Source of the DNA: Anthoceros angustus
Lineage: Eukaryota; Plantae; Anthocerotophyta
NCBI GenBank assembly: GCA_010909165.1
Contig: MU008200.1
Coordinates: 433,724-497,723, forward strand
Direction: 5' to 3'
DNA: 64,000 nt
Below, piece after piece: positions 11,226 through 36,700 of the stretch (its first letter is position 1; every line of letters begins with the position of its first letter). Made by a program: the position numbers and the translations under genes. The notes under the pieces were generated by a model, which made no database searches, was not told the DNA's origin, and saw only the letters and a list, made by a program, of their open reading frames with translations.

Positions 11226-11269
11226 ATCTGGAGGGGAAAAAACTGCAGAAGCTAGGTGGCGCCTGTAAT

Positions 11270-12700
11270 CTATGCTCGAATATGGAGGTTCCTGCCACTC
11301 TGAAGGTGGAGGTCTCTGCCTGAGTGGGCGGCGTGGGCGGCATACGCATCCGGAGGAGGATGCAGAACAGCGTGCTCAGCAGGTGAGCGGGGCATAAGCA
11401 AATCATCAACTGGATCTGGTAAGGTCTCTGCTGCTGCTGCATTTTGAACATGGTCTTCATCCTCAAACATGGCATTGAGCCGTAATGGATCGGGATCTAA
11501 GAAAGGTTCCTCTGTTGCAGCTGGTTGCACAGGCCCCTGTGCAGGGTCATTAGCAAATGGAGGATCCATCCCTACAAGCTCAAAGTCATCAGCTCCTGTA
11601 TCCCCAGCTGGTACAACAGGAACTACACCATCAGCATCTAGGGGATACAAGGACAAGAGACCTGTGACTCCTTCAACACTAGTGGAATCATCTGGAGGGG
11701 ATGAATTGCTCTCATCAATTGGAGTAGGCTGCAGAGATTCCAGGAAAGTAACGCTACGTGCAAGGACTGGTTGATGAGAAACAGGATCAACGAGTTTGTA
11801 GGCTTTTACAGTCTCACTGTAGCCAACAAACACTAGTCGTTTTGATCTGTCATCTAATTTTCGGCGTTTCTCAGCAGGAACATAAGCATAGGCTTTAGAG
11901 CCAAAGATCCTGAGGTGGAGAAGACTAGGCTTGCGCTTCCAGAAAAGTTCAAACGGTGTCTTGGCAGCAAGAGAGCTTGTGGGCAGCCTGTTGAGGATAT
12001 ATGTAGAAGTCACAACGGCTTCTGCCCAGTAAGGAGATGGGAGGCCTGACCACAACAACATGGCTCGAGTCATGCCCATCAAGGTCTGGTTCTTGCGTTC
12101 AGCAACACCATTCTGTTGCTGCGTATAGGGCACAATTAGTTGGTGAATTATGCCCTGTTCAGTGAATAGGTTAGAGAAAGACTGATTAACAAACTCTGTC
12201 CCATTGTCAGATCGAAAGATTTTGAGCAAGCAGCCTGTTTGACGCTGTGCTGTGAGGAGCCAGTCTTGAAACAAGGGAAAAGTTTCCTTCTTTCTCTTCA
12301 TGGGAAATGTCCATGTGAACCTGTTGTAATCGTCTGTGATAGTGAAATAATAGTCTGCCCCTCCAAGGGAAGAAACCTGAAGGCGGCCAGAGATGTCGGC
12401 ATGGACCAATTCGAGCAGCTGTGAGGATCTTTGTGTGGGGCCAGTAGGAAAGGGCAACTCCTTCTGTTTAGCGAGAGCACAAGTTTCACAAAGTGGCAAC
12501 TCCTTCAAACAGGTAGGTAAGGGCTCACGATAGCAATTGGTCTTGCTAAGGGATGCCAGAGTCTATTTATTAACATGTCGACTGGCATGCCAGATTCTTT
12601 GTTTAGGCGTCGAGTTATCTACACTATAGAATAAGCTGATGCACTGTTGCACAGGCGGTGAAATCCAGACGATACAAGTCGTGCTCCGGCAGTGCATGAA
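11270..12700 (-). CDS. pol: C1 GAG-pre-integrase, integrase core and INT-RT linker
   Basis: CETCALAKQ..LELVHADISG..ITDDYNRFTW..FRSDNGTEF..QQNGVAERKNQTL..YWAEAV..LRIFGSKAY. Confidence 0.95.
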
Positions 12701-17989: not shown

Positions 17990-20780
17990 CCTCGGCACAG
18001 CAGTTCACAGGCGTGAGCCGCCCTTTTGCTTGGCCCGGTTACTCTCGGCGTTGCGACGGGCGGTCATTCCTCCCAACGACCTCGCGACGGTTCTCGCAGT
18101 CTCTCGCGCTCAGGCACCCACTCTGGCGTTGTCTTTTCGAGCGCCCAAGCACCCTCACACGTAGCTCGTCATTGGGGTTGGAGCGACCGGCGCGGTGGCA
18201 GAGGAACATAAGGCGGATGAGCTTCAAGCCCCAACAGCGGAACAGGAGGAGCGTGGCAATGGGGCCCAAGAAGGTGGCGGAAGCGTGGGAGCCCTGGCGT
18301 CTGGTAGAACGCAACAACGTCACCAAGCGCTACCCAGACTTTGGCCCGTGGCTGGAGGAGGCGGAGGAGCTCGTGGAGGCCCAGCACTGGATATTTTCAG
18401 TTATAGGACTACGTTGCCTAGTCAGGGAGTATGCGGGAAGATGTTAGCGGCCAACAGGAGTCGCTCAAGAACTGCAGGAGGATCGGGGAGGTGGACGTGG
18501 AAGTCTAAGGCGGTCTATAGCGAGTCCGGCCGGAGGAGTAGGGGAGTAAGGGGCTGAAGGTGAGGGAAGGTGGGCGGCGAGGCGGCCCTTTTGCGACCAG
18601 GGACACAGCGATCCTCCAATGGTGGCTGATGTCGGACCTCTGAAGAGGAGGTTCTGACGATGGCGAAAATCATTGTCCACTGGAATATGCTCACCAAGGT
18701 GGACCACCTTGGTGATAATCTGCTGGTGTTCCTTCATGCCTTCTGAGGAGGAAAAGCATGAGGAAGGATCATCTTGGAATCAATCAGAGCCAAGAAGTTG
18801 AGGCGAAGCCACCTCCCGTCCAGGCGTTGTGCGTTCATCATCCATGTGTGGGGGCACATGAACCTCCTGAAGGAGGAGGAAGAGGAGCGGGCGCTACGAA
18901 AGGGGCTAGCCGCCCTACCAGAGGCGGAGCGTGAAGGAAAAACGCAGGAGGCTGAGGCCCGTCCGGTCCGGACCAAGCGGGTCCGAGAGGAGGACGACTG
19001 GGAGGGGATTCCGGACTCTATACGTCTGGAACGGACCCCCTCGCCACCCAGGGAGGTGTGGGAAGACATTCCCGCTTCTCTCCTCTTGGTTCCCCCACCG
19101 GAGCACCCTGCGCAGGAGGAGGCGACCATTACAGGCGGAGTCATGACGCCAGCAGCCAACAACGACTCAGCCCATCGAACCCCACCCCGACTCGGGAAGC
19201 GAGAGGCGGAAGGCGCCTACCAACGCAGCCTGTGCCGGGCCTTTATCTCCCTACCAACTGAGGGCGGGAAGTGGAGGAGGCGTGGCGGCGCGGAAAGACG
19301 CTGCCTGTGGAGTTGGAGGCACCGCGCACTGCCCGAGCCTGCCCCTGTCCCAACCGGGAGGGCAAGAGGGCTGTTCCGGACCTTCACCACCTCCGAGCCC
19401 TAGCCAAGAAGGCGGAGAAGGAGCTAGCTGACCAAGAGGGCCAAGAAGAAGGGAGGTCCGAAACACTCGGGACCTGAGGGTCCCGACAGTCGGAGCCTGG
19501 CCTGACTCCTTCTGACTGCAGATGGCGATCCTTAACGGACGGAGATGCCCGCACTGGGACTTTCTCGGGTGTCTCTCTATGGAGGAAACACGACGGGTTT
19601 TGGCTACCGTCATGGATTTTGGGAGGCTTAGTCTGCGAACATGGAGAAGACCAAAGAAGTGGAGGCCACCACGACTTGATGGTGGAGAGCCTGTAAGGTG
19701 TAGAGCACCAAGCGCGAAGAAGGCGGAGTCCCTCGCAAGGATCGAGGAGGAGAAGCGCCGGCGGAGAGAGAGGCCAGGTCCGATCAACAGATCAAGTAGA
19801 TCCTTCAGCGGCAAAGTGTGCGAGAGGCCCAAGCACGGGCTGAAGACCTTTGCAGACGGAGGGAAGTAGCGAGAGGAGCCTGGAGGAGGCCCGAGGACAA
19901 GCGAGCGGGGACCGCCGAAAGGCTCGGCAGAACAACACCAAGCCGGGAGGCTGTGAAGGCGGCGCGGAGGCGGACGGCTAAAACCGACGGACCATTACCG
20001 CCAGACAGGGAGGAGGAAACGGGCATGCCACGCTAACCGAAGGCCGAGCAAACCGCCGCAGAAAGGGGTACATGGCCGAGTGGGGAGAAGGAGGCCAAGA
20101 ATCGGGAGATGGAGGATCTCCGGACCCGCCATACGGAAACGAGGAGGCACGGCAGAAATGGAGGACCGCAAGGAAACCTTGAGCTATGCCTCAAGACAGT
20201 TAGCGGCATGGAGCCCTCCAGGGAGTGATCGCGGACCATGAGCGGGAGATAGGGCGGCTCCAGCTCTGTTTGAGGGTGGAGGAGAGTTGGCGGCGATCCA
20301 AGAAGTTGGACATCGCCGAGTTGAAGAAGAAGCTGGGGAAAGCCAGGAGCCAGGCGGAGATGCCGGACCGCCTGGAGAGGGAGATGGCGGACCTCCGGGC
20401 AAGGATGAACGGAGGGGAGAAGGCTCTGAGAGAGGAGCAAAAGCTGCTTGTCCTAGGTGCGGAGGCGTAGGGAGGAACGCAGCTCCATGGCGGCAAAATT
20501 TGGTCGAGCTACAAAACGGAGGAGGTGGAGGTGGCGAGGAGGCTGCGAGGGAAGTGATGGAGGCCTCCTTGGTGGCCTCACAGACTCTTCCCGTCTTGGT
20601 GGCCAGATGCAGCAGGGGCGGGCCAACAAAACCGCCCGGTGCCGGAGCACCCTGGCGAAGGGAGTGTAGGGTGCTCGGGCGCACGTGGAGGAGGCAATCC
20701 AACAAGTCGACTCCGACTTTGCCTTCTACCACGCGGAACTCCTCAAAGCTCTGGAGGTCCTGCGTCAACCACTGACTATG
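17990..20780 (+). pseudogene. G2a extra ORF, distant homologue of the G1 extra ORF, with C-terminal coiled coil; frameshifted
   Basis: One frame from 18660 reads MAKIIVHWNMLTKVDHLGDNLLVFLHAF*GGKA*GRIILE...CAFIIHVWGHMNLLKEEEEE. IAELKKKLGKARSQAEMPDRLEREMADL at about 20300-20400. Confidence 0.6.
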
Positions 20781-21249
20781 ACCGGACCTCCCGGGAGGGA
20801 TCCAGGAGGAGGGATGAAGGCCCCAGTGATAGCAGAGACCATTCGGCGGCGCGAGTAGCGGGGAAGGGGCCAGTGGAGGCAGGACATGGCGGACACCACC
20901 TGGGCCCAGGTAAGTCTTCCCCACTTGCCACGGAAGGAAGGGAGGGGGGCCTCGAGAGGGCCATAGAAGGAGAAGTCCTGGAGGACTTGGAACGACGTGG
21001 GGGTCCGGTGGGAGAGGATGGACACCCGAGGAGTCCGCAGGGAGAAGAAGTCCAAGGACACAGTCCCGGACCACGAGATCCGGACTCAGAATAGGCCGGA
21101 CCGAGGTCCATTGCAGATGAGACCGGACCCCAAGGTCCGGCTCAAGTCCCGACCTCGAGGCGGACGCGACGGAATCCAGTGGGGCAGGCGGGAAAGTCCT
21201 CACCCACCGCTAGGAGGCAACCTCCTGGGGCCCGGGCAGGGGCCCACGG

Positions 21250-21514
21250 TGAAGGAATAATTATTGTTTATGAGTTGACTCATGCTAGGGTTAGGTTATC
21301 TTAGTTTAGTTAACTTATCTGATGTGTAAACTAGGTCTAGTCACCTAGTACCCTTTCGGTAAGGTTGTGACTCTTACGAGTAGACGTAACACTTGGTATC
21401 TTAATTAGGTTGTTTTAAGCATAAGCAAGTTACTCTTTATTTGATCTTTCAATTCAATCAACAATGTAATTGTGTTTTATATAATTTAGTTATCCAATTC
21501 ACATAAAATCTTCA
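21250..21514 (+). repeat. 5' LTR of C2 (265 bp)
   Basis: TGAAGGAATAA...AAATCTTCA; followed by PBS TGGTATCGAGC (21515-21525, one base missing). Confidence 0.95.
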
Positions 21515-21699
21515 TGGTATCGAGCAGGATAGATGGAGATGCATCTAGTATGCACACACAAATTTTCTGCATTAGAAGATGTGCGAAAGATGTGTTTTAT
21601 TATTGTTTTGAATAATAACATGTTCTTGAAAAGGAACTTTTAAAGAAACATCAAGAAATGAATTTTGTGTTTCTCTTTAAAAATCTATACAAATTCTTG

Positions 21700-22441
21700 C
21701 TGCATTAGGTAGCCATTCTAGCGTGCATTCATTGAATTGCTCCCTTGAGCAATTGCAATGAACATACACTAGAAACGCCAATGGGCAAAATTATATATAG
21801 AAAAATACAAAGAAATATAAGATGCGAATTTCACTTATAAAACACAAATCCCTACGGCACATGGCCAATTTAGATGCGCACTGCAGCACACCACCGCTAC
21901 TCGAGAATCATCCTAGGCAAAATAGGTCAAGAATTGATGGGCACACAATTGCTTCGATTACATTCGGCATCCTACAATGGAGCCAACAAAACCAAAATAG
22001 ACCTATGCAAATTGATCCGAGAGGCATTTAATACTATTGTGGAATTTCTCTATCCTCAAGAGCGAGAATCGGTGTTTACTCTTCCTCCAAGAAATCCACT
22101 AAATTTGCGGCGTGTACAAAGAGCTTTTGATGGAAAGCAGCCCGTGGTTTCATCACAACTCAAACACAAACAGTGTCGGCACAATAATTAATCATCAAGC
22201 AAATAACAGGATAGTGGACGACGCACACAAATTAATGGACACTTGTCTACAAGCGTTGACTTACGATCCGAAGGAGCAAGTTGCACACTTGGACTACAAA
22301 ATGGTTATCTTCAAGCCCGAGATGCTCAAAAATCCAGTGTTCAAAACACGCTGTAAACAAGTAAGACAAATCGTGAGCGCTTTAGCTCACTTAACTCGTG
22401 TCCATCTTGCTCCACGTATGCCTACAATAGGTTCGAGATGA
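21700..22441 (+). pseudogene. Decayed ORF in the C2 leader (between PBS and gag), product unknown
   Basis: One frame reads TLETPMGKIIYRKIQRNIRCEFHL*NTNPYGTWPI*MRTAAHHRYSRIILGKIGQ...; a frameshift leads into DAHKLMDTCLQALTYDPKEQVAHLDYKMVIFKPEMLK. Confidence 0.4.
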
Positions 22442-22586
22442 GGAGCTCCAAAATTGCACGAGGAGGATCCGGGATCAAAACACGCACGCAATCAAGCGTT
22501 ATGAGCGGTGTGTCCGATCGGGGCGGTTTTGGGGATATATTCAATACATGAATTTGAACACGAGGTCGAACAACAAGCCATAAATA

Positions 22587-24712
22587 TGGCGACCTCAACT
22601 CCAAACTATGGAGGTAATGAATCCTTCAAGGAGAAGGATCGGTTCAATGGCAATGACTTTGACATATGGCGATCCGGATGGAGGGTCCTCGAAATGAGGG
22701 GCTGTGAAACATGCAACCGGAAAGGTAGTGAAACCGAGGATCTTCGGGAGAAGAAGAATGGTTAGCTAAGGATAGCGGAGCCAAGTACCTCATTCGCGGT
22801 GGCACGACAACCGAAATGTTGAGGCAGCATGGGTGGAAACTTCAGCCGAAATCATGAATCGTCTAAAGGAACTCTGCAGCGAACATGGTCGGTGCAATGA
22901 CAGCTTTAAGAAATTTCCAGAACTTGAGAATGAAGGATGGGGACTCAGTGGAGAAGCACGTGAGTACCTTTAGGACCCTAGCCTCCCGGCCGTGGTGCCT
23001 CTAAAGTTGCCATCAAGGATGATGAGATGGTGATGAGGCTCTTCTTCTTCGAGTCTTGGTCACACCGTGACCTCCCACACACTCGGACACAAGCTACTGT
23101 TAGCTAAGCAAGGCATAGAGATGCAGATGTCATTCTCACAACTTGTGAGTTCCATCAAGAAGAGGCAAGCGAACTAATCACAAGAAAGGAAACAACAGTG
23201 ACACCTCAAATCAAGGCGAGGAGGCAAGAAATCCTTCTCCAAAGGAGGTGGTGGAAATCCTTCCAAGGGAGGTAGCTCAGTGATCCTCATGGGAAGAAGA
23301 CTAAAAAGCGTGCACACGCGGTGCAAGCCTGGACATTGGGAAAAGAGTGTCAAAAAGCAAGCTGGAATTCCTCGCAAGGAGGGCACCAGGCGCCAATGTT
23401 GTGGTAAAGAAGGCTAATACCCCATCAGCTCTTACAGTTGGGACTAGGGAGTTTGCTAGTCCATTGCTGCTTCCCACTTGCCTTTTTGCCAAAGCTAATA
23501 TGAAACCAATAGATGAATGGTATTTAGATACGGGTGCTACTGCACACATCTACTTTGATAGAAATGCTTTCAAAACATATAGGTCTTTTCCGTCGGATGT
23601 TTACCTTGGGGACAGTCTCTAGTCTCACATGGTCGTGGCTTGAGTTGCTAGTTCCTAGGATCACACTCATGTTGTTAGAAGTCTACTATGTGCCAAATGA
23701 CTAGAAACCTTATTTCGATCGATTGAATGCGAGATAACAACGATCACGTTGTTTTCACTAGGACATGTAGAATCATAGATGCTATTGACCCTAGAAAGGT
23801 CCTTGCACATGGGTCTTGGACCACGATCATTGTCTCCATTTGCATGGAGTAAGTCCCACGACGACGTCTCCTTGCATCGCACAAACACAAAGTCTAAGTT
23901 GTGGCATGCACGCTTGGGTCACCCTCACATGGCAAAGCTGCAAAAATTGGTTATGGTGACAGTATCAAGATGGACCTATTGGCCCTTTGAGCCATACCTT
24001 TATGTGAGGCTTGTGTGTTGTCGAAGAAACACCAAGCTGCCTTCAAGAACAAAGCACCTCATCGTGCTGATGATCTCCTTGAGCTTGTACATACTAACCT
24101 ATGTGGACCCTTATCTCAAGCGTCCATAGGAGGTGGACGTTATTTTCTAACGTTCTGAGATGTGACAAAGCGGTTGTCACCACCTATATCCGAAGAACAA
24201 AAGCGAATGTTTCTCCTACTTCAAGGAATACATCAAATTCGCTGAGCGTTGGACAGGAAAACAACTCAAGACCCTGAGATCTGATAATGGCGGGGAATTT
24301 ACATCTAATGAATTCCAGCAGTTCTGCAAAGATGAAGGCATTGGACGCCAACTCACCATTGTATACACTCCACAACAGAATGGAGTGGCAGAGCGCTTGA
24401 ACCTCACATTGCAGGAGATGGTCTCCTCATTGTTACATGATGCTCATTTGCCACTACCATACTGGGCTGAGGCTTGGATGACTTCAACTTTTCTACTGAA
24501 CAGGTTGAAGGCAAAACTCCTTATGAGGCTTTTACAGGCAGGAAGCCCTCTATTCAATACTTGAGGATCTTCGGCTGTCTCGCATATGCCTTCATCCCTA
24601 AACAAAAACGCGATAAAAGTCAGATAAGGCATAGCCGCTTATCTGGGTATGAGGGATTAAAGCTTACAAGCTATATGATGTCCCCACAAATAGAGTCATC
24701 TATGCTCGGATG
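22587..24712 (+). pseudogene. gag-pol: C2 gag, protease and integrase, heavily frameshifted
   Basis: KEKDRFNGNDFDIWR; EWYLDTGATAHI (about 23515-23550); KLWHARLGHP; LRSDNGGEFTSNEF...TPQQNGVAERLN; LRIFGCLAYAFIP. Confidence 0.9.
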
Positions 24713-25105
24713 AAGATGCGGAGAAGCTGAAAGATAACGATGAAAATGCGAAGGAAAATGAAGACGAGGACAAGCAAGAAGATGAGGATGAAAATGAAAA
24801 TGTAAATGAAGATGAGGAGGAGAAGGAAAATGAGAACGACCATGAAAATGAAAATGAATATGAGGATGACAATGAAAATAAAGATGAAGGAAATGAAAAT
24901 GAAAATGAGGATGAAGATGGGTATGCGGATGAGGATGAAGATGAGTATGCGCATGAGGATGGAATGAGAGAAGATGAATGGGACGATATAGAATGGATAT
25001 GATGGAGGTTCATGACTCATCTAAGTCAGTGGATATGATGGAGGTGGAATTATTGGTGGACATGATGGAGGTGGAATTATCGGGGACATGATGGGGTGGA
25101 ATATC
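24710..25105 (+). repeat. Low-complexity GAA/GAT/AAT tract (reads as about 97 D/E/N-rich codons) followed by 26-27-bp Gly-rich repeats
   Basis: DEDAEKLKDNDENAKENEDEDKQEDEDENEN...; GGA(C/T)ATGATGG(A/G)GGTGGAAT-type unit at 25031, 25058 and 25084. Confidence 0.85.
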
Positions 25106-25606
25106 CAATACATCGAATGCAAGAATAAACATTGTTGGGATTACTATCAAAGAAACTAAACCAATTAAAAGTAAGGAACAAAAAGTATGTGAGTTATTCC
25201 GATTGGGTACTTTTACGATTAGGGCTGTGCTTTGATCATATCAAAGTTTACTATGAATATATATTTCTTTGTTGTTTTACAAAGAAGAAGGTTGATTCAT
25301 TTTCTTAGAAAATAATAATTTTTCTACTCATGATTATCTATAGATAGGGTAAATTAATTGGCTGGCTGCAATCAGTCTTCAAGTTGGCATATTTTCTATG
25401 AAGACTAACGAAGTGGGTTTCAAAGTTAATAGAAAACACAAGTCTTCAAAAGACAAGTCCATTTCAAGCTCTATCATTCATGTGACTACCCTCTAGATCA
25501 CTCATCTTTAGAAGATCGAGAACTTTGCAAAGAGATGGTGCACTTAACATCACCATATATTTGTGATTGGGAGATGCTCAAGTGATCAAAACAAATATTT
25601 GAAAGC

Positions 25607-25632
25607 ATATATATATATATATATATATATAT
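25607..25632. repeat. (AT)13 microsatellite
   Basis: Read directly from the sequence. Confidence 0.98.
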
Positions 25633-25649
25633 TGATCTCTTTCATACCG

Positions 25650-27954
25650 CTTAATAGATAGTCGGTCTCTTGATTTCAATGCCAAAGAGCGGAATTCAAA
25701 GTTTCTATTAGGACAGATCGTGAAGGTTCCCAATCCTCTTGTTCTTCACAGAAAGTTTCCAATCCTCTTGTTCTTCACAAAGAACGCCAATTCCACCAAC
25801 GTTGCCTCATCATATGTCTTCAAAAGATATCACGAGAGTTAACTAGCTGAAATAAGTTCCAATAACACCGCATTCACTAAAGCTTTAGATATCAATCACT
25901 TTGGCCTGAACTATAAGCTTGTATAATACTCGGGATCAAGGTAATCCGCCAAGGTGCCCGATTACAAGGGATGCATGACTAGCCCATTGGGCTGACTTTG
26001 AAATGCTAAAATGAGCCACCTTAGCATTTAGGTAGTGGTCTAGAAGAATGTTTAAATTTGAAGACTTAACATCTCTATGAAACATAGATCTACGTTTGCT
26101 AAATGTAGATACTCTAAAGCCTCAAAGGTTTGAAGAGCAATCAAGGGCCGTTGTCTCCAAGTGAGCCCGGACATCCCTCCCTTTTCCCTTATGTAAGGTG
26201 CCCTTGGGAACATAACTCAAGACAAGGAGAGCAACTTTCTTCTCCAAGCAACAACTTGACTAGACTGCTACGATTGACTTGCGATAAAATTCTCACGTCA
26301 TTAAGCGGCAGCTTATCTAGGTGAGCCCTCACGCTCCTTTTGATTGCCACTGCCATCGTTGCCTTTCTCTGGTGCCAAAGCCGCCCACTCAATCTCGAGG
26401 TGTGTGTAAAGTTAGCTGGGTGGGAAGTTTGCGAAGAGATGTGGGTGACAAGTGCTCTCCATTTCGAACTCGCTTGATTTTGCTTGTGTTTGAGTGCTCT
26501 CCATTTCCGAACTCGCTTGATTTTGCTTGTGTTTGGAGTGCTCTCTCCCATATCGTAGAATGGATAGTAACAACTCCGGTAGTAAATACCGGATGATCGG
26601 GATGATCATCTCATCCACACGAAGCAGTTGGATTCCGCCCCATTCGCCATAATTACGGGACGGAAGAAGAGCCGCAAAGTTCGTAATTGTTAGCAAATAG
26701 GCTTGGATCGTTGAAATAGCGGACACGGGATGTGCCGACTTGATCGTTGTTGGACACATTCATGTACCTCAACTCGTGCAAACCAAGTGAAGGCCTCGAG
26801 TCTCCTCCAAATTGCAGATTAAGATCCAAGACAATTTGAGACTATAAGCAAGCAAGCCTTCCATGGAGTCATGGAGTACATTGTTGGATGCGTTCAATCG
26901 TTGCGTGTTTAAATAAACCCCCAACCAAATCCATAAACTCCCTCCCCCTCCCCCTCGCCCCCACATTGTTGTTGCTAATATCGAGTACTTGAAGAGAGTC
27001 AGGTAGCGTTGGAATGGGATCCGAGGAGTTGTTATGTGACACTAAAGATGGTCAAGTTTGGGAAGCTGATGCCTAGAGTTTCCGGTATCCTGCCCGTCAA
27101 ATTGCACGATGGAAGGTCCAAGACTCTCGGGCAATGATAGTGGTTTGCAGCCCATTGCGACTCCTCTCGAGCAATGTGTTCCCCCAAAGATTGGTACCCG
27201 CCAGCGGAAGTTCCTCCAAGGGCCCGTCGTAGTCCATTAGAGCCTGTACTAAATTAAGATGTTCCCACATGGATGACAAAGTGAACTAAGGTCCAGGGTC
27301 CGAAAAGCTTTGAAGTTTCGAATATGAAGAAAAAAGTCAGCCGGATCTCCTGTGAAGCAATTCCCTAGGTGAGCAAACCTAAAGGAATGTTGCTGTAATG
27401 TTATCGAGCGAGAGATCCAGCAAACTACTAGAAACGAGGCATTTCTGAAGATCGGGCGGGATTGCACCAGACAGCAAATTGTTGGACAGGTCCAAGTGAG
27501 TGACGCTAGTGAAGCGACGGAATCGGCCCAAGTTGTTGGGCGTCCATGTGGGTCGATTAGTGAAGTGCGAGGTATGTGACGGAGAAATTGTTGTTGGACA
27601 GTGTATGTGAGGACCGAGACTATGCTATCCGCAATGGTCCTTAGTGAGTTCCAGAAATGTTGACCACCTTGGTGGAACTACGGAAGAAAAGCCGTGAGCC
27701 CAGACGGCGGTTGTGAAGAGAAGACGTGAAGAGAAATAGGCATATCTTTTCGGACTGGTGCAACTTACAACTGGCGTGGCGGGTGAATCTGCGCCATTGG
27801 CTATGAGGCGGTTTTTTTCCACATCCTCGCAATAAGTTATGGAGGCACGGTGGTGTAGTGGTAGTTGTATATCTTGCCACAAGATCGACTCGGGTTGGGC
27901 TCCGGTCAGTGCTGCAATGAAAAGTATCACTATCGCATTTTGCTCTCGGAGCAT
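25650..27954 (-). pseudogene. Leucine-rich-repeat receptor-like kinase (signal peptide, about 10 or more LRRs, C-cap, TM, RD kinase), frameshifted, no introns evident
   Basis: Manual minus-strand translation: MLREQNAIVILFIAALTGAQ (27954); THLDLSNNLLSGAIP (27501-27457); RVLDLPSCNLTGRIPETL; SLQVLDISNNN; LHELRYMNVSNN; FNDPSLFANNYELCG (C-cap); GGFGT; VAIKR; ILSQVN..LVKLL; LTWRQR..IALQT.EALEYLH; HRDVKSSN (26079-26056); YLDPEYY (25943-25923); VLLELIS. Confidence 0.88.
26451..26546. repeat. 42-44-bp tandem repeat (about 2.2 copies) in the RLK juxtamembrane region
   Basis: AGTGCTCT starts at 26451, 26493 and 26537. Confidence 0.85.
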
Positions 27955-28291
27955 TTGATTGAGATCTCTGTGAAAACGTGAAAACGTTGTGAATTCCCCT
28001 AAAAATCGTGGTGCCGTTTATGAGACATCCAATTCCTCCCTCAGACTTCCGGGGGAGCTCAGGATGCTCATTAGACTTCTTCTTTTTCTTCTTCGAGTCG
28101 GGTTCAGTTTGCTAAGACCAGCCTGAGAAATCCAGCCTAAACCCAGCTGCAAACTCAGGGGGATTCACAAGCCTTCAACTGAGGCGATCTCCTCTCTTGT
28201 TTTGCTGTTTGCCAATAGTAGACAGAGAGGCCATGTACATGTCCAATAATGTCTAACTGGATGACAAATTATTGGATGTTAACGAGAGAAA

Positions 28292-30215
28292 ATATTTGAT
28301 GAAACAAGTACTTGGGCGTCAGTGGGAGCACACACTCATGTTCCCACCCCTGAAGACAGTGAGGAAACCTTTGAACTCTCTCACTATGACCTAACAGATC
28401 ATGGCACTCATACTCACCCTATTGAGGAACATGCTCCTGCAGGAGGGGGCAATCAAGCAGTATTAGGAGAAGAACAACCTGAACTTGACATTCAACCTGG
28501 AATGCCACTGCCAGATCTACAGGATCACATTCCTCAACCAAGGATAGCAGTCGATGATGTACCATTTGATGCTGATCAGGATGCTGATCAGGATGCTACT
28601 GACGAGGAATTAGAGGAAGTTGATGATGTACTTCTGCGAACTGAGCGAGCACTGCGACGTTACCCTACACGTGAACGTCAACCTCCTGACTACTATCATG
28701 CACCAGACTTCAGGATTACCTCTTCTCATGTGAAGGCTTATGCCGCCACAACATTAGATCCCATAGAGCCACAGTCTTATGAGGAAGCTCTCAGCAGGCC
28801 CGATCACAAGGAATGGAGAAAGGCAATCCGATGAATATGATTCTCTTATCGAGAATGGAACTTGGGAACTAGCAAAGTTGCCCAAGGGCGTGTCATGTAA
28901 ATGGGTCTTTAAATTGAAGGTCAAGGCGGATGGATCTTTTGATACAAGGCGATTAGTTGCTAGAGGTTTCACACAAATTCCAGTTTAGATTACCTCGAAA
29001 CCTTTGCTCCCGTCAAGCTTGCTACTTTTCGGACCATGTGTGCGATTGTGCGACAAGGACTACGAGTCGGATGTTTGATGTGAAGACGGCTTTCTTGCAT
29101 GGAATCCTTGATACAGAGATCTACATGCAACAGCCACCTGGTTATGAGGTTAACGGCAAGGAGGATTATGCTTGCAAACTAATTAAGTGCCTCTATGGAC
29201 TTAAGCAGTCAGCAATGAAATGGAATGCTGCACTGGACAAGGAGTTGCGAGCTCTAGGTTTTACAAAAGTAAGGCGTGACTTATCGTATACATCAAGAAT
29301 GATGTAATCTGCTTAATTTGTTATGTCGATGACCTCATCCTTGCAAGCAACACGACTGGATTTTATCTCTTCGATCACGAATCATTGGCACAAAAATTCA
29401 AGATGTCGGACCTTGGACCTTTGCAAAGTTGCTTAGGAATACACATTCATATAGAGAAAAAGGATCCTTACCATGACTCGGCCGATCTCTGGAAAGTGCA
29501 GGCGATTAGGACTCAAAGATGCCAAACCAACACCTCTTCCAAGTGGTCTCAAGTTGAGCAAAGATATGTCGCCAGTTACACAGTCCGAGAAGGACGATAT
29601 GAGAAATGTGCCATACAGGCAAGGTGTGGGCAAACTCATATATGCCAACACAACACGACGGAGGTGGCGTACTCGACAAGTGCTCATCCCGATCTCGAAA
29701 ACCAGGCGAGACACATTGGACTTGTGTTAAGAGAGTTTTCCGGATCTGAAAGGCACACCAAAGTATTGTGTATACTCACAAAGATGGTGTGGCACCTCGT
29801 GTACACCGATTATGCGGTGACATAGATACGAGGAGGTCGGTTTAGTTATGTGGTGAGCTATCTTTGGAGGACCTATTGTTGGTCAAGCAAAAAGCAACCA
29901 GTTGCACTCTCAAGCACAGGCGAATACAGTACTTAGCTGCTGAAGGAGGTTATTTGGCTAAAGCTGCTGTTTTGAGCTTGGCATTGAGTTGCTCGCTTGC
30001 ACAAAATCGAAAACCCAACCAATTCACTAGCTGAAAATCCCGTTTTCCACTCGGGACAAAGCATGTGGCGTGGAATACCCGATTAGAGAGCTACTAGCAC
30101 AAGCACAATATCTGGAATACATAGCAACTCAAGAAAACCCGGTGACATTTTCACAAAGGCTCTAGGCAGGGATCTACATGAGAAGCATGTAAAGTTTTTA
30201 GGCCTAGGTGACTCC
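28292..30215 (+). pseudogene. pol: C2 INT-RT linker, reverse transcriptase and RNase H, frameshifted
   Basis: RRYPTRERQPPDYY..EPQSYEEALSRPDHKEW; CKWVFKLK; FDVKTAFLHG; LYGLKQSA; YVDDLI; TKAL near 30155. Confidence 0.9.
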
Positions 30216-31264
30216 TCGGAGTCCCTAGGTAGTAGTGCATAAAGTCAAGCCATTCTCGGCGGCATTCTAGCTAGAAAGAAGAGCATTGTCGGTGTAGTCG
30301 TTGAAGTTTGTCTCATCACGAGACTTCAAAGAATAGGAATCCCCATCGGACTCGATTCTCCGAGGTGTGACTCTCCTCCTCATCTTGAAGGATCGGGGCT
30401 GCTATAGGGCGGTGGTTTTCCTCCACACTCTCTTGCACGGCCGAAATCCTGTCTTGATTGGAGGTTCGATTCTTCTTCCGGTATGTTGGATCCACCGCGA
30501 TGGGAGCTTAGTGTAGCATCTCACATGCACGTAAAAGATTGCAACGAGTATTGAAGCTGGGATCTTACTATAAGTCGACACATGAAATGGGTAAGCCCAT
30601 TTCGACCTTGACACGTCTCATCACGGCTTTGACGCCCACATAAACCACTGCCACGGGGCTGCGGATGCTTGATGGAGCCATAAGAGGCGATCAGTCTCCT
30701 TGAGCAGTCTGCAGCTTAGGAAAGCTAGGCTCTTCACGAGGTTAGTCTCATTCTCGGAAAAGCCGAAATCGGGATTAACATGGGCCTTTACTCTTGTCGC
30801 TTTGGAGTGGATGAGGCGGGCGTGCTGCGGGCCATGGGCTCACTTGCTGGCGTGGCTCGCCTTGCTAGGACCTCCTTGGTGCCTCGCCTTCCACGAGGCG
30901 ATTACCAGTACCCACTGAGTGCTCACATCGTGAGGAACTGAGCTTCTAGTTGTGGTAAACCCCCTGGTCCCTAGGCGATTTCTACGCTTGGGCTGGAGTC
31001 TCGGATGCGAGGCGAAGACATGATGCTCGCTTCGCACTCCTTAGCCACGGGATAATGAGAACTACACTCACGTATGCTATTGTTGAGTAAGCGCACCTTA
31101 GTGCGAACCACTTCACAGGTGTCTCCATGCTTTTATTCGCCAAGGAGTGGGCGCGGCTCTATGGTACTCGCGTGCAGAACTAGGGCGTGAATGCAGACAA
31201 AGCACAGGACACACAAGGAACCCACGAAAGAGAAGGCGTACAAGTCATGATCAACAAGTGGGAG

Positions 31265-31514
31265 TGAAGGAATAATTATTGTTTATGTGTTGACTCATGC
31301 TAGGGTTATGTTACCTTAGTTTAGTTAACCTATCGATGTGTAAACTAGGTCTAGTCACCTAGTACCCTTTCGGTAGGGTTGTGACTCTTACGAGTCGTAA
31401 CACTTGGTATCTTAATTAGGTTGTTTTAAGCATAAGCAAGTTACTCTTTATTTGATCTTTCAATTCAATGAACAATGTAATTGTGTTTTATTAATTCAAT
31501 TCATAAAATCTTCA
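31265..31514 (+). repeat. 3' LTR of C2 (250 bp)
   Basis: By manual alignment, 6 substitutions and 15 deleted bases relative to 21250-21514; preceded by AAGTGGGAG. Confidence 0.95.
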
Positions 31515-31644
31515 CGAGGAAGGTGAGGAGGATTTGGTTGTGATCAGTGGTCGGGGCCGTGCCTAGGTGGCTCAATAGCGGACCACGATCTTGGGAAGGG
31601 GAAGGGGCCCACCGCTGGATCATCCGGTCTGGGGCCATAACCGC

Positions 31645-32442
31645 TGTGGTGAGGATTAGCCACAGTGAGGTGGGCAGGGCACTCAACCTACCGACTCAAG
31701 CGAGATAGGTTAGGAAGAAATAGTAGGCGGCGATAGTATTACCTTGAATGGCTCACTCGAATAAGAGTGTAATAAAGACGCTGACCTTGGGCGTAGTATA
31801 AGAGGGCAGGGGCCGCTCTAGTAAAGCATCTTTCTCTTGGGGTGGACACCGCATTTCGTTGTAGACCCCTTTGCATCTCGGCTAACGTGAGCCCTGAGTC
31901 ACTTTCCAGGCGGGCACGGCAGCTCCGGAGGCAGTCAAGGTCTGATGATGACGGACCCTAACGTGTGGTGGTGGTGTGAGGAAAGGCGATCGAGATCCTG
32001 CTCGGTCGGAAGATGGCGTGGCCGACAGTCGGAGCGGGCCGGACGCATGGTGGGGAACCCGGGCGTCAGAGCTGGACGGAGAGGCCCGGTGGAACGACGG
32101 AGGAGGTCCGGGCCATGCGGCCCACCCTCCTTTTTCCCAAGACAATGAATGTAGTGAGAGTGGTAAAGAGATCGGACTAGACGAATGAGTGTTCTGACGG
32201 GTGTGACTTGAGTCCTTAAGCAGGTCGCCATGGTTACGCGGGCATTTATTCGATATTACAGAATGTTACAGTGGTTAAGCTGTAAATCGGTGAATCACGT
32301 GTGTTTGAGTGGCTGATCGCGGCACTTTGGGCGAAAGCAGTTAAAAGCGTGACAACGGGAATGTCATTCCCTTGGAGCGGACTCCTTACTACAACAACAG
32401 GATTATGCGCGCCGGTGACCGTCGGCAAAATTAAGCGCCACA
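31645..32442 (+). repeat. Probable 3' LTR of G2a (left boundary uncertain)
   Basis: Homology with 51302-52065 (-) ends at GCGCCACA in both copies; AATAAA at about 31771 and TATAAGAGG at about 31797. Confidence 0.65.
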
Positions 32443-32604
32443 CCTTTATCCTAAATTCGCCTGTTCATTCGAGGCGTCCTCGACCTGCGGTAGTACATGC
32501 TCCTCGCTCTCACCGTGGGTTGGCGACCTACGGCGCCCAGCCTACCGCCCCTTGGGCTACCTACTCCTAAAAGATCATTTCTCAACCCGGTTTCTTCTTC
32601 CCAA

Positions 32605-32766
32605 TGTCGGTAATTAACCTACACTAGTCAACCTAGGGTTATGGTCCTCATACGATTAAATGATACTTAAAAGACAATTTTGTTCATTACTCAATTAATC
32701 AATACATTTGGTAGTTGTGTGCTTAAGGCTCTCCGGCTCTCGCCTTCTACTACTCCCAAATTCACA
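32605..32766 (+). repeat. 5' LTR of C4
   Basis: TG...CA; 104 bp (32657-32760) identical to 38962-39065. Confidence 0.96.
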
Positions 32767-32813
32767 TGGTATCAGAGCTCCCCGTTTACGATGTTACATT
32801 CTCGTTATTAATT

Positions 32814-33495
32814 ATGCCTCGGCGGTGGATCTACATTGGTCGGTAGCGGCTCGCGTTTCTGAATCGACAACCTACATCGCTCTGGGCGGCTCGGCCGAAC
32901 TCAGCATGGTATACTCTCTTGTGGGAAGGTCGGGATTAGCGGTGGTCGAGGCAGGGGCGTCTTGAACTTCTTCGGCAACTCCATCAACGGGATTTTCAAA
33001 TCCGTGATTACCAGGCTCGGGACCGGTTTTACAGAGACCAGAGAAAGGACAGGAGACAGAGGCACGCTCGCATTGCGGACCTCCGCCGTCCCAAACAATT
33101 CCTGCAGGCCACTAAGACCTCCTCGGCCTGAGGACTCTGTATCTTCTTCCGCTGGAGATACCCCTCGAGTTTTTCACACTGAGGACACCTCCAGCCAACT
33201 CAAGGAGATTCTCGCCGCGACAGAGTCCCTCCACACAAGAATTCTTGTCAATAACATGCAAACACAGGCAAGCTTTGATGTTTTCAACGAGAAATTGACA
33301 TCCAAGATCAAGGAAATCACTGATCACCTGCAAAGATTGAAGATTGCTGCCCCCAGCATCCGCCAGGCCCCAGTGTTTCCCGATCACTCACCTTCCATTG
33401 CACGAGGCGAGGTGCGGCGTCGCGTGTGCTCTGCGACCCTCAATCCATGCGACACACAGCGGGCGCGCCTCTCCACTGCCGGCTACATCTCTTGA
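32814..33495 (+). pseudogene. Extra ORF between PBS and gag in C4 (about 225 aa if early frameshifts are corrected)
   Basis: ATG CCT CGG CGG (MPRR) 35 nt after the PBS; the open frame 32962-33495 contains SQLKEILAATESLH...LTSKIKEITDHLQRLKI. Confidence 0.5.
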
Positions 33496-33780
33496 GCTTG
33501 AGGTCAGAGAAGCCGTGTCTCTCCAGGTAAAGCGCCACTGTCGGTTAGTGTTGTCCCAAGCCAACCGACACACCACTTCACTAACGGACTAGATCGAGGC
33601 TGGGATGGATGCCGAGCCACACGAAGAACGATCAACCTTTGAGTTTGCGGCCCTCACTGCAGACGGGAGACCCTTCCCTGCGACCAATCTGATTAGTGCA
33701 CAAACACAGTACGTAAAGCAGTGATTTTCATACCTTCTGCCCTTCTCTAGGTCATAACCTTAAAGAGGGGGCTCTTGCGC

Positions 33781-36700
33781 ATGTCAGATCGCTCTACGCC
33801 CTCAGATGGTAGTGGTGACTCAACGCACACTAGTGATTCTGGCTCAGATTACCCTGAACCTCCAGATCCTATTGTAAATCAACTAGCAAACCAGTTGCAG
33901 GCGCTCACCTTAGTACCCAAGATGGGCACTAACCCACCACCACCACCGCCTCCTCCACCCCCACCTGCACCCCCGGTTTGGCACCGGTCTACACCTGTCC
34001 CCACTTTCACCTCGGACATGAAGGAGAAGGATCGCTTCAATGGCACTAAGTACCCGGTATGGAAGGTGCGCATGCGATCAGCCCTGAAAGCCCGTGGAGT
34101 ATGGGGAGTTGTGGACAAATCAGTTCCAGAACCGGATCCCAACAGCACGCCTTCTGCCCACACAGTGGAGCGTTGGCTCCTCAATTCCATCGCCTTGCTT
34201 TTATTATCAATGGCCTGGATGAAGACCTTGTACCTACAGTGGAATTCCACACAAGAGCACATCAAGTTTGGGACCAGCTTGCTAGCACATACCAAGTTAA
34301 CAATCGTGTCCTCTGCTGTGTCGGACGAAATTCTACTGCGTTGAAGATGAGGGAGGGGGAGAAAATGCCGCTCACGTCAGCAAATTTCGTCAACTCAGAT
34401 CTCAACTGTTGAGCATGGGCACGAAAATGGACGAACTGGATGCGGCAGCTCACCTCCTTACAACGTTACCACCTTCGTATCAAGGCTTCATCACCACACA
34501 GAACACTCCATATCTCCACGACCTCGGTACTTAACTTCAACCTATCTGATTGACATCCTTGTGGGTGCCCTGTTTCAGGAAGAACAAGCTAGACACAATT
34601 CATCTGGAGGCTCTCGTTCCAAGGGAGATAAGATTATGTCTGCACGGCATACATCAAACAGAAGCAAGGGTAAATCTCAGAACAATCAGAAGTCTGACCC
34701 CAGCCCTTCTAACCCAACCAAAAGAATTGGCAATTGTAATTGGTGTGGGATTGCCGGGCATTGGGCCCGCGAATGTAAAAAGAAGAAGGCTGGTGAGCCA
34801 CAGAGGACTTCCAAGAATTCTGCTAGTGTTGTTAAGGAGAAACCCAGTGACAATAAAAGTGTAGTAAAAATACTTACAGTCTGCTTGATTAGCTCTTGTC
34901 AGGACAACGAGGGTTGGTACTTAGACTTAGGTGCCACAGCTCACATTTGTCGAAACAAGCATCAGTTCACCTCTTTGAGCTTGTGTTGTGAGAACGACAA
35001 AGTTCTCCTCGGAGATGAATAGACTGACAGCAGCCTGCAAGTCAAGGGACAAGGCAAAGTCGTTTTTCAATTGAAGGACGGTTCAGATCTTATTCTGGAA
35101 CGCGTTTTGTACGTACCAGCCATGGCGAAGAATCTGGTGTCCATGAGTCAGCTTCTCAAGCTGAGGACTCTCGAGATGAAAGCCACTGGTGATACGTGCA
35201 GCTTCTACAGAAAAACGACTCCTGACAGTTGCATTTTCAAGGGTTTGCTTGATAATGATTTGTACCGCCTTGACCTCCCATCTGTGAAGGCTGCCACAGT
35301 TCACAGCATTGGATTAGTCAATTTGGACACCAAACAATTGGCCTTGCTATGGCACGCGAGACTTGGGCACCCCAACAGGCAGAAGTTGGTGGATATGTCC
35401 GCGAAACAATGTCATAGGGAACCACTTCCCCGTTGTTTCAAGGACCTACCATCCTGCGAAGCGTGCATACTTGCCAAGCAGAGGGAGCATCCTTTTCCTT
35501 CTACCCCAGCGTACAGAGCAACCTCTGTATTGGACCTCGTCCACGCTGATATATCTGGGAGGATACAGGTGCCCTCCATAGGTGGCTCAATTACTATCTT
35601 ACCTTAACAGACGACTACAGTCGCTACAGTTGGACATTTCCTATGCAGCGGAAAAGTGACACCTTCAAACTCTTCAAAGAGTGGCTTCCTGCAGTGCAAC
35701 GTCAAACAGGCTCATTGCTCAAGTATCTGCGTACAGACAATGGAACCGAGTTTGTCAATGTTGCATTTGATGATTACCTCATTGCGGAAGGCATCCAGAG
35801 ACAGCTGACTGTCCCATACACACCCCAGCAGAATGGGGTGGCTGAGAGGAAGAACCAAACTCTCCTGGCTATGACCCGGAGCATGTTGCTCTGGTCTGGA
35901 CTTTCTCAAGCATACTGGGCTGAGGCTATTGTTGCCGCAACATACATCTTGAACAGAATTATGACCAACTCTGTTCCTGATCAAACACCCTATGAGGTTC
36001 TCTATAAGAGGCCGAGCCTATTACACTTGCGTGTTTTCGGCTCCCGGGCATATGCGCTTGTTCCCTCAGAGAAGCGTCGTAAGCTAGACCCAAGAGCCCA
36101 AGCCCTAATTTTCGTAGGGTACAGCGAGCAGTCTAAGGCTTATCGACTGTATGATCCAACTGGTAGGAAGATGTCCCTCTCACGTAGCGTGACCTTCATT
36201 GAACCAAAGTTCCCTCTGCATTCTCGTGCTACAGGTTTAGAGGGAGCTATATCACAACATGATGAGACAGAGGGAGCTCCTGTCCCTCTTGCATCTGATG
36301 GGCAGGTCACCTTTCATATGTTTCCACAAGAGCCTGATCCTATAGACGAACCACCAGATGCTGCTGTACCGGATGATGTGCTACCTGCATATCCCCCACC
36401 TGATGATCCAGACCATCTCGAGGAACCCGCATCTCCTGCTCATTCACAGGCTAGTGACGGTCCTCAGGATGTTTTCAACCTTTTTGCACAAGATTCAGAC
36501 TCTGCAGATGATGAACACCCGGTGGAGGACCTGGTCCTACCAGCTCCTGCCATTCTTGATCCTGATCCTGAAGAGGTGGCCCCTTGACGTTCTGGCCGTC
36601 ATCGTCCACCACCTGACCAATGGGCAGAACCGAGATATCAATCCATTGATTTTAGGAGCAGGCATGCATGGCCTCTCGCTCCTTGACATACGATGAGCCT

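What the first reader, a model, noticed from the sequence alone, without database searches (positions are those of the whole stretch)
24713..28291. A whole LRR receptor-like kinase gene carried antisense inside a Copia retrotransposon
Seen in sequence: the integrase C-terminal motif of C2 (RVIYARD...IFDET) is split by about 3.6 kb. On the opposite strand this insert holds a full receptor architecture: signal peptide, plant-type LRRs, the FxxxSxFxxNxxLCG C-cap, a TM segment and kinase subdomains I-XI. No introns are evident. The ORF track misses it because of frameshifts. The insert also has about 335 bp upstream and about 940 bp downstream, no poly(A) and no clear TSD. Inference: antisense orientation and lack of poly(A) suggest DNA-level capture rather than mRNA template switching. 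If the cassette travelled with C2, the element would be a vehicle for copying receptor genes. Because indels here may be consensus errors, the gene could be intact.
Basis: partly seen in the sequence, partly recalled or inferred. Interest (0 to 1): 0.82.

Follow-up and report, generated by a model that had tools for sequence, protein, structure and literature searches.

The report
Dead receptor-kinase copy inside dead Copia
A frame-broken, intron-free copy of a plant LRR receptor-kinase gene lies backwards inside the integrase gene of an equally broken Copia retrotransposon; it is a real but fairly ordinary genomic fossil, and nothing shows that the element ever spread the gene.

Summary
A Ty1/Copia element (LTRs 21250-21514 and 31265-31514) has its integrase SH3-like domain cut between ...RVIYAR and REKIFDET... 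by 3,573 bp (24710-28282). No Copia sequence is lost.

On the minus strand the insert carries a collinear receptor-kinase gene: signal peptide, about 13 plant-type LRRs, C-cap, TM segment and a WAK/SYMRK-like kinase. The gene has about 330 bp upstream and 930 bp downstream. There is no gap of intron size.

The gene is dead. It has 8-21 frameshifts (depending on the penalty used), 3-4 in-frame stops, a mutated DFG motif, and internal 43-bp and 29-bp duplications. The frameshifts are not tied to homopolymers, and a neighbouring Copia keeps long ORFs. Consensus error is therefore unlikely.

The Copia ORFs carry about the same lesion load, so insert and element have drifted for a similar time.

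The junctions have no TSD, TIRs, Helitron ends or poly(A). This fits a DNA-level insertion at a break. No second copy of this Copia family or of the donor gene could be found, so "cargo that travels" is untested and, on priors, unlikely. Host genes inside LTR retrotransposons are already well documented. Interest is low to moderate.

The parts
21250..21514 (+). 5' LTR of Copia C2 (TG...CA, 265 bp), followed by the PBS TGGTATCGAGC at 21515
   Evidence: blastn self-match and alignment to the 3' LTR with 8 substitutions and 4 indels
22508..24709 (+). Copia gag, protease, integrase and the first ~62 positions of the SH3-like domain. Degenerate: 3 frameshifts and 1 stop in the integrase alone.
   Evidence: Pfam Pol_BBD, gag_pre-integrs, rve, SH3_retrovirus; tblastn and frameshift-aware alignment to C1/C3; ends ...RVIYAR
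24710..28282 (-). 3,573-bp insert of non-Copia DNA. It has no TSD, TIR, Helitron termini or poly(A). Only CG(R) is shared at the two junctions.
   Evidence: sequence at the junctions; end-to-end alignment tests at chance level; no Copia protein similarity inside
27955..28282 (-). about 328 bp upstream of the receptor-kinase start codon (donor 5' flank or 5' UTR)
   Evidence: position relative to Met 27954
27740..27954 (-). start codon, signal-peptide-like segment (MLREQNAIVILFIAALTGAQPES) and an LRRNT-like N-cap region
   Evidence: translations; P0020 N-cap alignment at 27612
26656..27739 (-). about 13 plant-type LRRs plus the C-cap YFNDPSLFANNYELCG. Reading it needs 4-12 frame changes and passes 2-4 stops.
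   Evidence: Pfam LRR_1/LRR_8; LRR trace score 267 against shuffles 68 +/- 22
26400..26600 (-). TM-like segment (about 26590-26530), a basic stop-transfer stretch, and a juxtamembrane region containing a 43-bp x 2.2 tandem duplication (26451-26545)
   Evidence: translation frame 0; Tandem Repeats Finder
25640..26385 (-). RLK/Pelle kinase domain, WAK/SYMRK-like. GGFGT, VAIK, HRDVKSSN and LDPEYY are present; DFG reads HFS. There are 4-9 frameshifts and 0-2 stops (depending on the frameshift penalty), a 6-nt insertion in the catalytic loop and a 29-bp tandem duplication at 25722-25779. Subdomains X-XI are weak.
   Evidence: PDB SYMRK E 3e-6; alignments at 46-50% identity; score 219 against shuffles 29 +/- 2; C-lobe weak
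24710..25639 (-). about 930-bp AT-rich 3' flank. It contains (AT)13 at 25607-25632, a 27-bp repeat at 25029-25102 and a 270-bp purine-rich (ATGAAR)n minisatellite (24710-24980) that abuts the left junction.
   Evidence: Tandem Repeats Finder and repeat families; GC 0.34-0.40
28283..30206 (+). Copia continues: end of the SH3-like domain (REKIFDET), acidic linker, RT (RVT_2) and RNase H. Degenerate: 14 frameshifts and 4 stops.
31265..31514 (+). 3' LTR of Copia C2 (250 bp)

Best explanation
A one-off fossil. A 3.57-kb stretch of genomic DNA was inserted, as DNA, into a chromosomal break inside the integrase gene of a resident Copia copy. The stretch held one complete, natively intron-free LRR + WAK-type receptor-kinase gene with about 0.3 kb of 5' flank and 0.9 kb of 3' flank. 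The likely route is end-joining or synthesis-dependent repair that captured or copied ectopic DNA, for example one unit of an RLK tandem array. The orientation is accidental. Neither the gene nor the element has been under selection since, and both have decayed by small indels, stops and tandem duplications. Nothing here works today.

Shown: the anatomy, the clean junctions, and the equal decay of insert and element.

Inferred: the break-repair route, and that the event happened in this copy only.
For: - Clean junctions. Copia reads ...RVIYAR | insert | REKIFDET... with no loss or duplication beyond CG(R). C1 and C3 are colinear across that point.
- No mobile-element signature. There is no TSD, no TIR and no direct terminal repeat (scores 15-16 against a null of 14.5 +/- 2.4). 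There are no Helitron 5'-TC/CTRR-3' ends and no poly(A) or poly(T) at either end. No tRNA-derived element is present and there is no TE protein similarity inside the insert.
- The insert carries non-coding flanks on both sides of the gene.
- Matching decay. At frameshift penalties of 12-16, disabling lesions run at 8-10 per kb in the RLK against 7.6-8 per kb in the Copia ORFs. That is about the per-lineage indel rate of the LTR pair (4 indels over 265 nt).
- The frameshifts look real. They are not at homopolymers, and C1 and a 758-aa ORF in the same window are unbroken.
- No second copy of C2 was found in the window, the protein collection or metagenome contigs.
- Capture of foreign DNA at double-strand breaks is established knowledge in plants and yeast (papers listed, e.g. 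PMC1976456, PMC8871565).
Against: - The donor locus was not found, so microhomology and filler structure cannot be checked.
- Break repair often deletes a few bases, and none are missing here.
- The RLK is at least as decayed as the Copia ORFs (ratio 1.1-1.7). The insertion must therefore have come early in the life of this copy, or the donor was already partly broken, or the gene rode in with the element.
- The rest of the genome was not available, so 'one-off' rests on absence of evidence.
Confidence: 0.55

Rival explanations
1. Cargo of a non-autonomous Copia lineage. The RLK segment entered an ancestor of C2 (by the same DNA-level route) before the last round of retrotransposition. It was then copied, antisense, along with the element by proteins supplied in trans.
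For: - The RLK lesion load is equal to or somewhat above that of the Copia ORFs, as expected if it was already on board at integration.
- Antisense orientation spares a passenger from the element's own processing signals. Earlier, unchecked notes report that Copia families in this genome often carry antisense genes.
- LTRs, PBS and PPT are present.
- Genes, including immune receptors and protein kinases, inside LTR retrotransposons are published (PMC5664825, PMC3726574, PMC13317346).
Against: - No second copy was seen anywhere I could search.
- The insert destroys the integrase SH3-like domain.
- The frameshift load of the Copia ORFs matches the LTR indel rate. This suggests the ORFs were still intact at integration, which fits an autonomous copy that was hit afterwards.
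- The antisense genes noted in this genome lie between pol and the 3' LTR, not inside integrase.
- A similar 'cargo' claim in this genome was resolved as a nested insertion (note s1-411983).
Confidence: 0.17
2. Nested mobile or RNA-derived insertion. The 3.6 kb is either a decayed transposon that had captured the RLK (Pack-type, Helitron-like or unknown), or a cDNA of an RLK transcript captured at a break.
For: - The insertion is clean, with no loss of target sequence.
- The gene shows no gap of intron size, and its flanks are of UTR-like size.
- The 3' end carries a simple-repeat tract.
- A nested DNA transposon explained another Copia 'cargo' in this genome.
Against: - There are no TIRs, no TSD and no Helitron ends.
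- There is no poly(A), and the terminal repeat is pyrimidine-rich on the gene's sense strand.
- There is no transposase or other TE protein similarity.
- The family is reported to be natively intronless (untested notes), so lack of introns is not evidence for an RNA origin.
Confidence: 0.12
3. Assembly artefact. Either the insert is a misjoin, or the frameshifts are consensus errors and the gene is really intact.
For: - The left junction abuts a 270-bp minisatellite.
Against: - Two misjoins that restore the Copia reading frame to the codon are very improbable.
- Frameshift sites are not enriched for homopolymers (0-24% against a background of 21%).
- The lesions include stops, a DFG-to-HFS change, and 6-, 29- and 43-nt duplications.
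- The LTR pair shows 1-, 3-, 1- and 10-nt indels.
- C1 and two ORFs of 577-758 aa are unbroken in the same window.
Confidence: 0.05

Closest known systems
[quoted passage not shown]
   Same: A host-derived coding sequence lies between the two LTRs of an LTR retrotransposon. Here it is a receptor of a family that expands by duplication (PMC13317346, PMC3726574, PMC5664825).
   Different: - The published cases are inferred to have been copied through RNA (intron loss, multiple copies) and are often expressed.
- Most pepper cases sit in non-autonomous elements without gag-pol.
- Here there is a single dead copy, antisense, with flanking non-coding DNA, inside an otherwise complete gag-pol.
- There is no evidence of a second copy or of passage through RNA.
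Capture of ectopic ('filler') DNA at double-strand breaks by end joining or synthesis-dependent repair (NUMT/NUPT, T-DNA junctions, fragment capture in yeast)
   Same: A kilobase-scale foreign DNA segment is inserted at one point, with no TSD, no element termini, random orientation, and at most 2-3 nt shared at the junctions (PMC1976456, PMC2567098, PMC8871565).
   Different: The donor here is a nuclear gene with its flanks rather than organelle DNA or T-DNA. The donor itself was not identified, so templated copying and fragment ligation cannot be told apart.
LRR + WAK/WAKL-type kinase receptor family of bryophytes (notes s1-313417 and s1-694456 on this genome)
   Same: An LRR ectodomain joined to a kinase whose best matches are WAK-like, SYMRK and FERONIA-type RLK/Pelle kinases. 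There is no gap of intron size.
   Different: I could not retrieve an intact member to align, because the protein searches are limited by query length. Family membership therefore rests on the domain pairing only. This copy is frame-broken.
Antisense accessory genes of Copia elements noted in this genome
   Same: A gene-like unit on the strand opposite gag-pol inside a Copia.
   Different: Those units lie between pol and the 3' LTR, are shared by several copies and do not disrupt pol. This one splits the integrase and derives from a recognisable host gene family.

Membership tests
Ty1/Copia LTR retrotransposon | Pair of direct LTRs (TG...CA) with a PBS next to the 5' LTR | tested here: met
   LTRs at 21250-21514 and 31265-31514, about 97% identical over aligned bases; TGGTATCGAGC follows the 5' LTR
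Ty1/Copia LTR retrotransposon | Domain order gag - protease - integrase - RT - RNase H (integrase before RT) | tested here: met
   Pfam Pol_BBD, gag_pre-integrs, rve, SH3_retrovirus, RVT_2 in that order; colinear with C1/C3
Ty1/Copia LTR retrotransposon | 5-bp target site duplication | tested here: inconclusive
   Flanks read CACGG and CGAGG, 3 of 5 identical
LRR receptor-like kinase (RLK/Pelle) | Signal peptide, tandem plant-type LRRs with caps, one TM segment, cytoplasmic Ser/Thr kinase, all colinear | tested here: met
   significance shown by shuffles
LRR receptor-like kinase (RLK/Pelle) | Open reading frame and intact catalytic motifs (functional gene) | tested here: not met
   8-21 frameshifts and 3-4 stops; DFG reads HFS and the catalytic loop has a 2-residue insertion
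Processed (mRNA-derived) retrocopy | 3' poly(A) tract and flanking target site duplication | tested here: not met
   The sense-strand 3' end is a (CATYTT)n tract. There are no direct repeats at the ends.
Processed (mRNA-derived) retrocopy | Introns of the parental gene are missing | not testable with these tools
   The parent was not found. Notes say the family is natively intronless (untested).
Retrotransposon-transduced cargo (Bs1-type or retroduplication) | Same passenger at the same position in two or more copies of the element with different insertion sites | not testable with these tools
   Only this window is available. There is no other C2 copy in it and none in the searchable collections.
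Gene-capturing DNA transposon (Pack-TIR or Helitron) | Terminal inverted repeats with a TSD, or 5'-TC...CTRR-3' inserted at AT | tested here: not met
   TIR alignment score 15 against a null of 14.5 +/- 2.4; junction bases do not fit Helitron ends in either orientation

The most novel reading that the evidence does not exclude
C2 represents a non-autonomous Copia lineage of a seed-free land plant that picked up a complete LRR receptor-kinase gene with its promoter region in antisense and retrotransposed with it. That would make it a retrotransposon vehicle for duplicating cell-surface immune-type receptors outside the angiosperms. This copy would be a decayed descendant.
Probability: 0.15. Interest if true: 0.55.

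Novelty: new member of a known kind. Interest (0 to 1): 0.25.

Why it matters
As it stands, this is a well-resolved example of how a whole gene with its flanks can land inside a retrotransposon without any transposon signature. It is a caution against reading every 'gene between two LTRs' as captured cargo.

If other copies of the family carried the same insert, retrotransposon-driven duplication of receptor genes would extend from flowering plants (NLRs in pepper) to bryophyte-grade plants and to receptor kinases.

An antisense RLK inside a transcribed or silenced Copia could also feed small RNAs against its paralogues. That is speculation and was not tested here.

Tried and rejected
- Pfam on ten stop-free pieces gave only weak LRR and kinase hits, because the frames change every 30-60 codons. 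I replaced this with my own frameshift-aware alignment.
- The whole-library phmmer search with the 61-aa catalytic piece returned mostly multi-kinase proteins and no close relative. Only P0020 also aligned to the LRR part.
- The word search with the same piece found no candidates.
- The word search with the C2-specific linker ORF found no relatives.
- Exact look-up of eight window ORFs showed none in the collection.
- Two metagenome scans found nothing for the Copia linker and one bacterial kinase contig for the kinase piece, which is irrelevant.
- The search of earlier findings by sequence was blank.
- I tested and rejected Helitron, TIR-transposon, LINE-type retrocopy and terminal-redundancy (circle-junction) models at the insert ends.
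- I rejected homopolymer-type consensus error as the source of the frameshifts.
The broken gene was searched piece by piece, by reference only.
Full report
**The host element**

Positions 21250-31514 form a Ty1/Copia retrotransposon on the + strand.
- A self-blastn of 21.0-31.5 kb against the window finds only one long direct repeat, 21249-21514 against 31264-31514.
- Aligned, the two LTRs start with TG and end with CA. They differ by 8 substitutions and 4 indels of 1, 3, 1 and 10 nt.
- The 5' LTR is followed by TGGTATCGAGC, a one-base variant of the initiator-Met tRNA primer-binding site typical of Copia (my knowledge).
- Pfam places Pol_BBD, gag_pre-integrs, rve, SH3_retrovirus and RVT_2 in that order.
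- Proteins of two other Copia elements in the window (C1 at 9.6-12.5 kb, C3 at 33.8-36.6 kb) align colinearly.
- The 5-bp flanks (CACGG and CGAGG) match at only 3 of 5 positions.
- LTR divergence of about 0.032 puts the integration at roughly 1-2 Myr under commonly used plant rates. That rate is an assumption, not measured for this lineage.

**The split**

The integrase C-terminal SH3-like domain is interrupted.
- The left half reads IKAYKLYDVPTNRVIYAR up to 24709, then runs into MKMRRS-stop.
- The right half reads stop-REKIFDETSTWASVGAHTHVP from 28280, with R at 28283.
- The left pieces match profile positions 1-30 and 46-62 of the 73-position SH3_retrovirus model.
- C1 and C3 read LAR-SVTFLE and LSR-SVTFIE at the same place. 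The motif is therefore cut between two adjacent codons and nothing of the Copia is missing.
- Only CG(G/A) occurs on both sides.

**What the insert holds**

Read on the minus strand, allowing frame changes, it is a colinear receptor-kinase gene (translations).

| Feature | Position / sequence |
|---|---|
| Start and signal-peptide-like stretch | Met at 27954; MLREQNAIVILFIAALTGAQPES |
| N-cap-like region | follows the signal peptide |
| LRRs | about 13 repeats of the plant 24-residue type, e.g. THLDLSNNLLSGAIPPDL, VLDLPSCNLTGRIPETLG, LQVLDISNN |
| C-cap | YFNDPSLFANNYELCG, near 26700 |
| TM-like segment | IIPIIRYLLPELLLSIL followed by basic residues, about 26590-26530 |
| Kinase motifs | GGFGT, VAIKRS, LVKLLG/CCLEKKVALLV, LTWRQRPLIALQTFEALEYLH, HRDVKSSN(LN)ILLDHYLNAKVAHFSISK, GTLADYLDPEYY, SF..VLLELIS |

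Supporting evidence:
- The 61-aa catalytic piece finds the SYMRK kinase (E 3e-6) and FERONIA in PDB.
- It reaches E < 1e-3 against 58 cluster representatives of 1.84 billion proteins. None of them is close.
- A frameshift-aware local alignment that I wrote (protein against DNA, BLOSUM62) aligns 26385-25848 to WAK-like kinase domains at 46-50% identity.
- Its score of 219 compares with 29 +/- 2 for 25 dinucleotide shuffles and 27 for the opposite strand.
- A plant-LRR consensus trace over 27661-26658 scores 267, against 68 +/- 22 (maximum 121) for shuffles and 41 for the other strand.
- No gap of intron size occurs between these parts.
- Subdomains X-XI are only weakly recognisable, with a possible ...SGMKEI for RPxMKEV near 25650.
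- About 328 bp precede the start codon and about 930 bp follow the kinase.

**The gene is dead, and the lesions look real**

- The path needs 21 frame changes and passes 4 stops at a lenient frameshift penalty. At strict penalties it needs 8-10 frame changes with 3-4 stops, over about 1.4-1.5 kb of aligned sequence.
- DFG reads HFS and the catalytic loop has a 6-nt insertion.
- There is a 43-bp x 2.2 duplication in the juxtamembrane region, a 29-bp x 2 duplication in the C-lobe, and an (AT)13 tract at the end of the kinase.
Windows around the frameshift sites hold a homopolymer of 4 or more in 0% (kinase), 17% (LRR) and 24% (Copia) of cases, against 21% in the background.
- The LTR pair shows multi-base indels.
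- Another Copia (C1: ORFs of 412, 223 and 306 aa) and ORFs of 758 and 577 aa in the same window are unbroken.
An intact gene is nonetheless very unlikely.

**Relative age**

I scored the Copia ORFs with the same aligner against C1 proteins and compared them with the RLK.

| Frameshift penalty | Copia ORFs, frameshifts + stops (per kb) | RLK, frameshifts + stops (per kb) |
|---|---|---|
| 8 | 17 + 5 over 2.1 kb (10.4) | 16.6 per kb |
| 12 | 8.0 per kb | 10.2 per kb |
| 16 | 7.6 per kb | 8.1 per kb |

- The per-lineage indel rate of the LTR pair is about 7.5 per kb (4 indels over 265 nt, halved).
- All three sequence classes therefore seem to have drifted without constraint for about the same time.
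- This excludes a recent insertion of a functional gene into an old element. It also excludes insertion of a very old pseudogene.
- It cannot separate 'inserted soon after this copy integrated' from 'was on board when it integrated'.
- The Copia ORF load matches the LTR rate. This suggests the ORFs were intact at integration, which leans slightly toward an autonomous copy that was hit afterwards. The counts are small.

**How it got there**

- The ends carry no target-site duplication and no inverted or direct terminal repeats above chance (scores 15-16 against 14.5 +/- 2.4).
- They have no Helitron termini in either orientation and no poly(A) or poly(T).
- The insert contains no TE-protein similarity and no tRNA-like sequence.
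- Exact preservation of the Copia sequence argues against two independent template switches during reverse transcription. It fits an insertion at a single break.
- The presence of both flanks of the gene fits genomic DNA as the source.
- I therefore favour capture or copying of ectopic genomic DNA during double-strand-break repair, a known process (papers).
- The 270-bp (ATGAAR)n minisatellite that abuts the left junction is unexplained. It may be donor 3' flank or a product of repair.
- Lack of introns is not informative. Earlier notes on this genome describe intronless LRR + WAK-type kinase genes in tandem clusters, and another frame-broken copy (s1-313417, s1-694456). I could not test these notes.

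**Does the Copia carry it around?**

I could not find any other copy of this Copia family.
- None in the window at DNA level.
- None for its family-specific linker ORF in the word-indexed protein collection, within the allowed length range.
- None in metagenome contigs.
- The window's ORFs are not in the exact-match collection, so neighbouring loci could not be fetched.
- Searches for the RLK parent also failed. The single metagenome hit is a bacterial contig.

The 'vehicle' idea is therefore untested. I give it about 0.15-0.2, given the equal decay and the reports of antisense genes in Copia elements of this genome. Against it stand the disrupted integrase, the single copy, and a comparable claim in this genome that resolved to a nested insertion.

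**Comparison with what is known**

Host genes inside plant LTR retrotransposons are well documented.
- Maize Bs1.
- 86-123 NLRs per pepper genome inside LTR-Rs, along with protein kinases (PMC13317346, PMC3726574, PMC5664825).

This case belongs to that kind in layout, but it lacks the defining evidence of passage through RNA or of multiple copies. It is best filed as a new, dead member of a known kind, not a new mechanism.

**Limits**

- The rest of the genome and the reads were not available.
- Frameshift counts depend on the penalty and on distant references.
- The organism (a seed-free land plant) is taken from earlier notes only.

Noticed in passing
window 9624-12508 (minus strand): Copia element C1 has three long consecutive ORFs (412, 223 and 306 aa: integrase, RT, RNase H). 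It is much better preserved than C2 and shares no DNA-level similarity with it.
   Followed up: partly
window 18000-21249 and 31515-33500: C2 is nested in a GC-rich (0.55-0.65) stretch with long overlapping ORFs on both strands and proline- and arginine-rich translations. It is probably another, older repeat; a neighbouring note mentions an Athila-like element upstream of the window.
   Followed up: no
window 43853-49090 (+ strand): Two long ORFs (758 and 577 aa), serine-rich. The first has no Pfam family at E <= 0.01. They are possibly exons of a real gene of unknown function.
   Followed up: partly
window 30207-31264: About 1 kb lies between RNase H and the 3' LTR of C2, with short minus-strand ORFs (70 and 65 aa). 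Other notes report antisense accessory genes at this position in Copia elements of this genome. I did not examine it here.
   Followed up: no
window 24710-25113: A purine-rich (ATGAAR)n minisatellite (periods 6, 24 and 48) and a 27-bp repeat sit exactly at the left junction of the insert. All three minus-strand frames are open across the minisatellite; on the plus strand at least one acidic frame is open (about 96 codons) and the other two hit stops within a few codons. The openness is a composition effect, not a gene.
   Followed up: partly
window 33775-36587 and 54148-54723 (+ strand): Further Copia-type gag and integrase ORFs (C3, C4) show that the window is a nest of unrelated Copia families.
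   Followed up: partly
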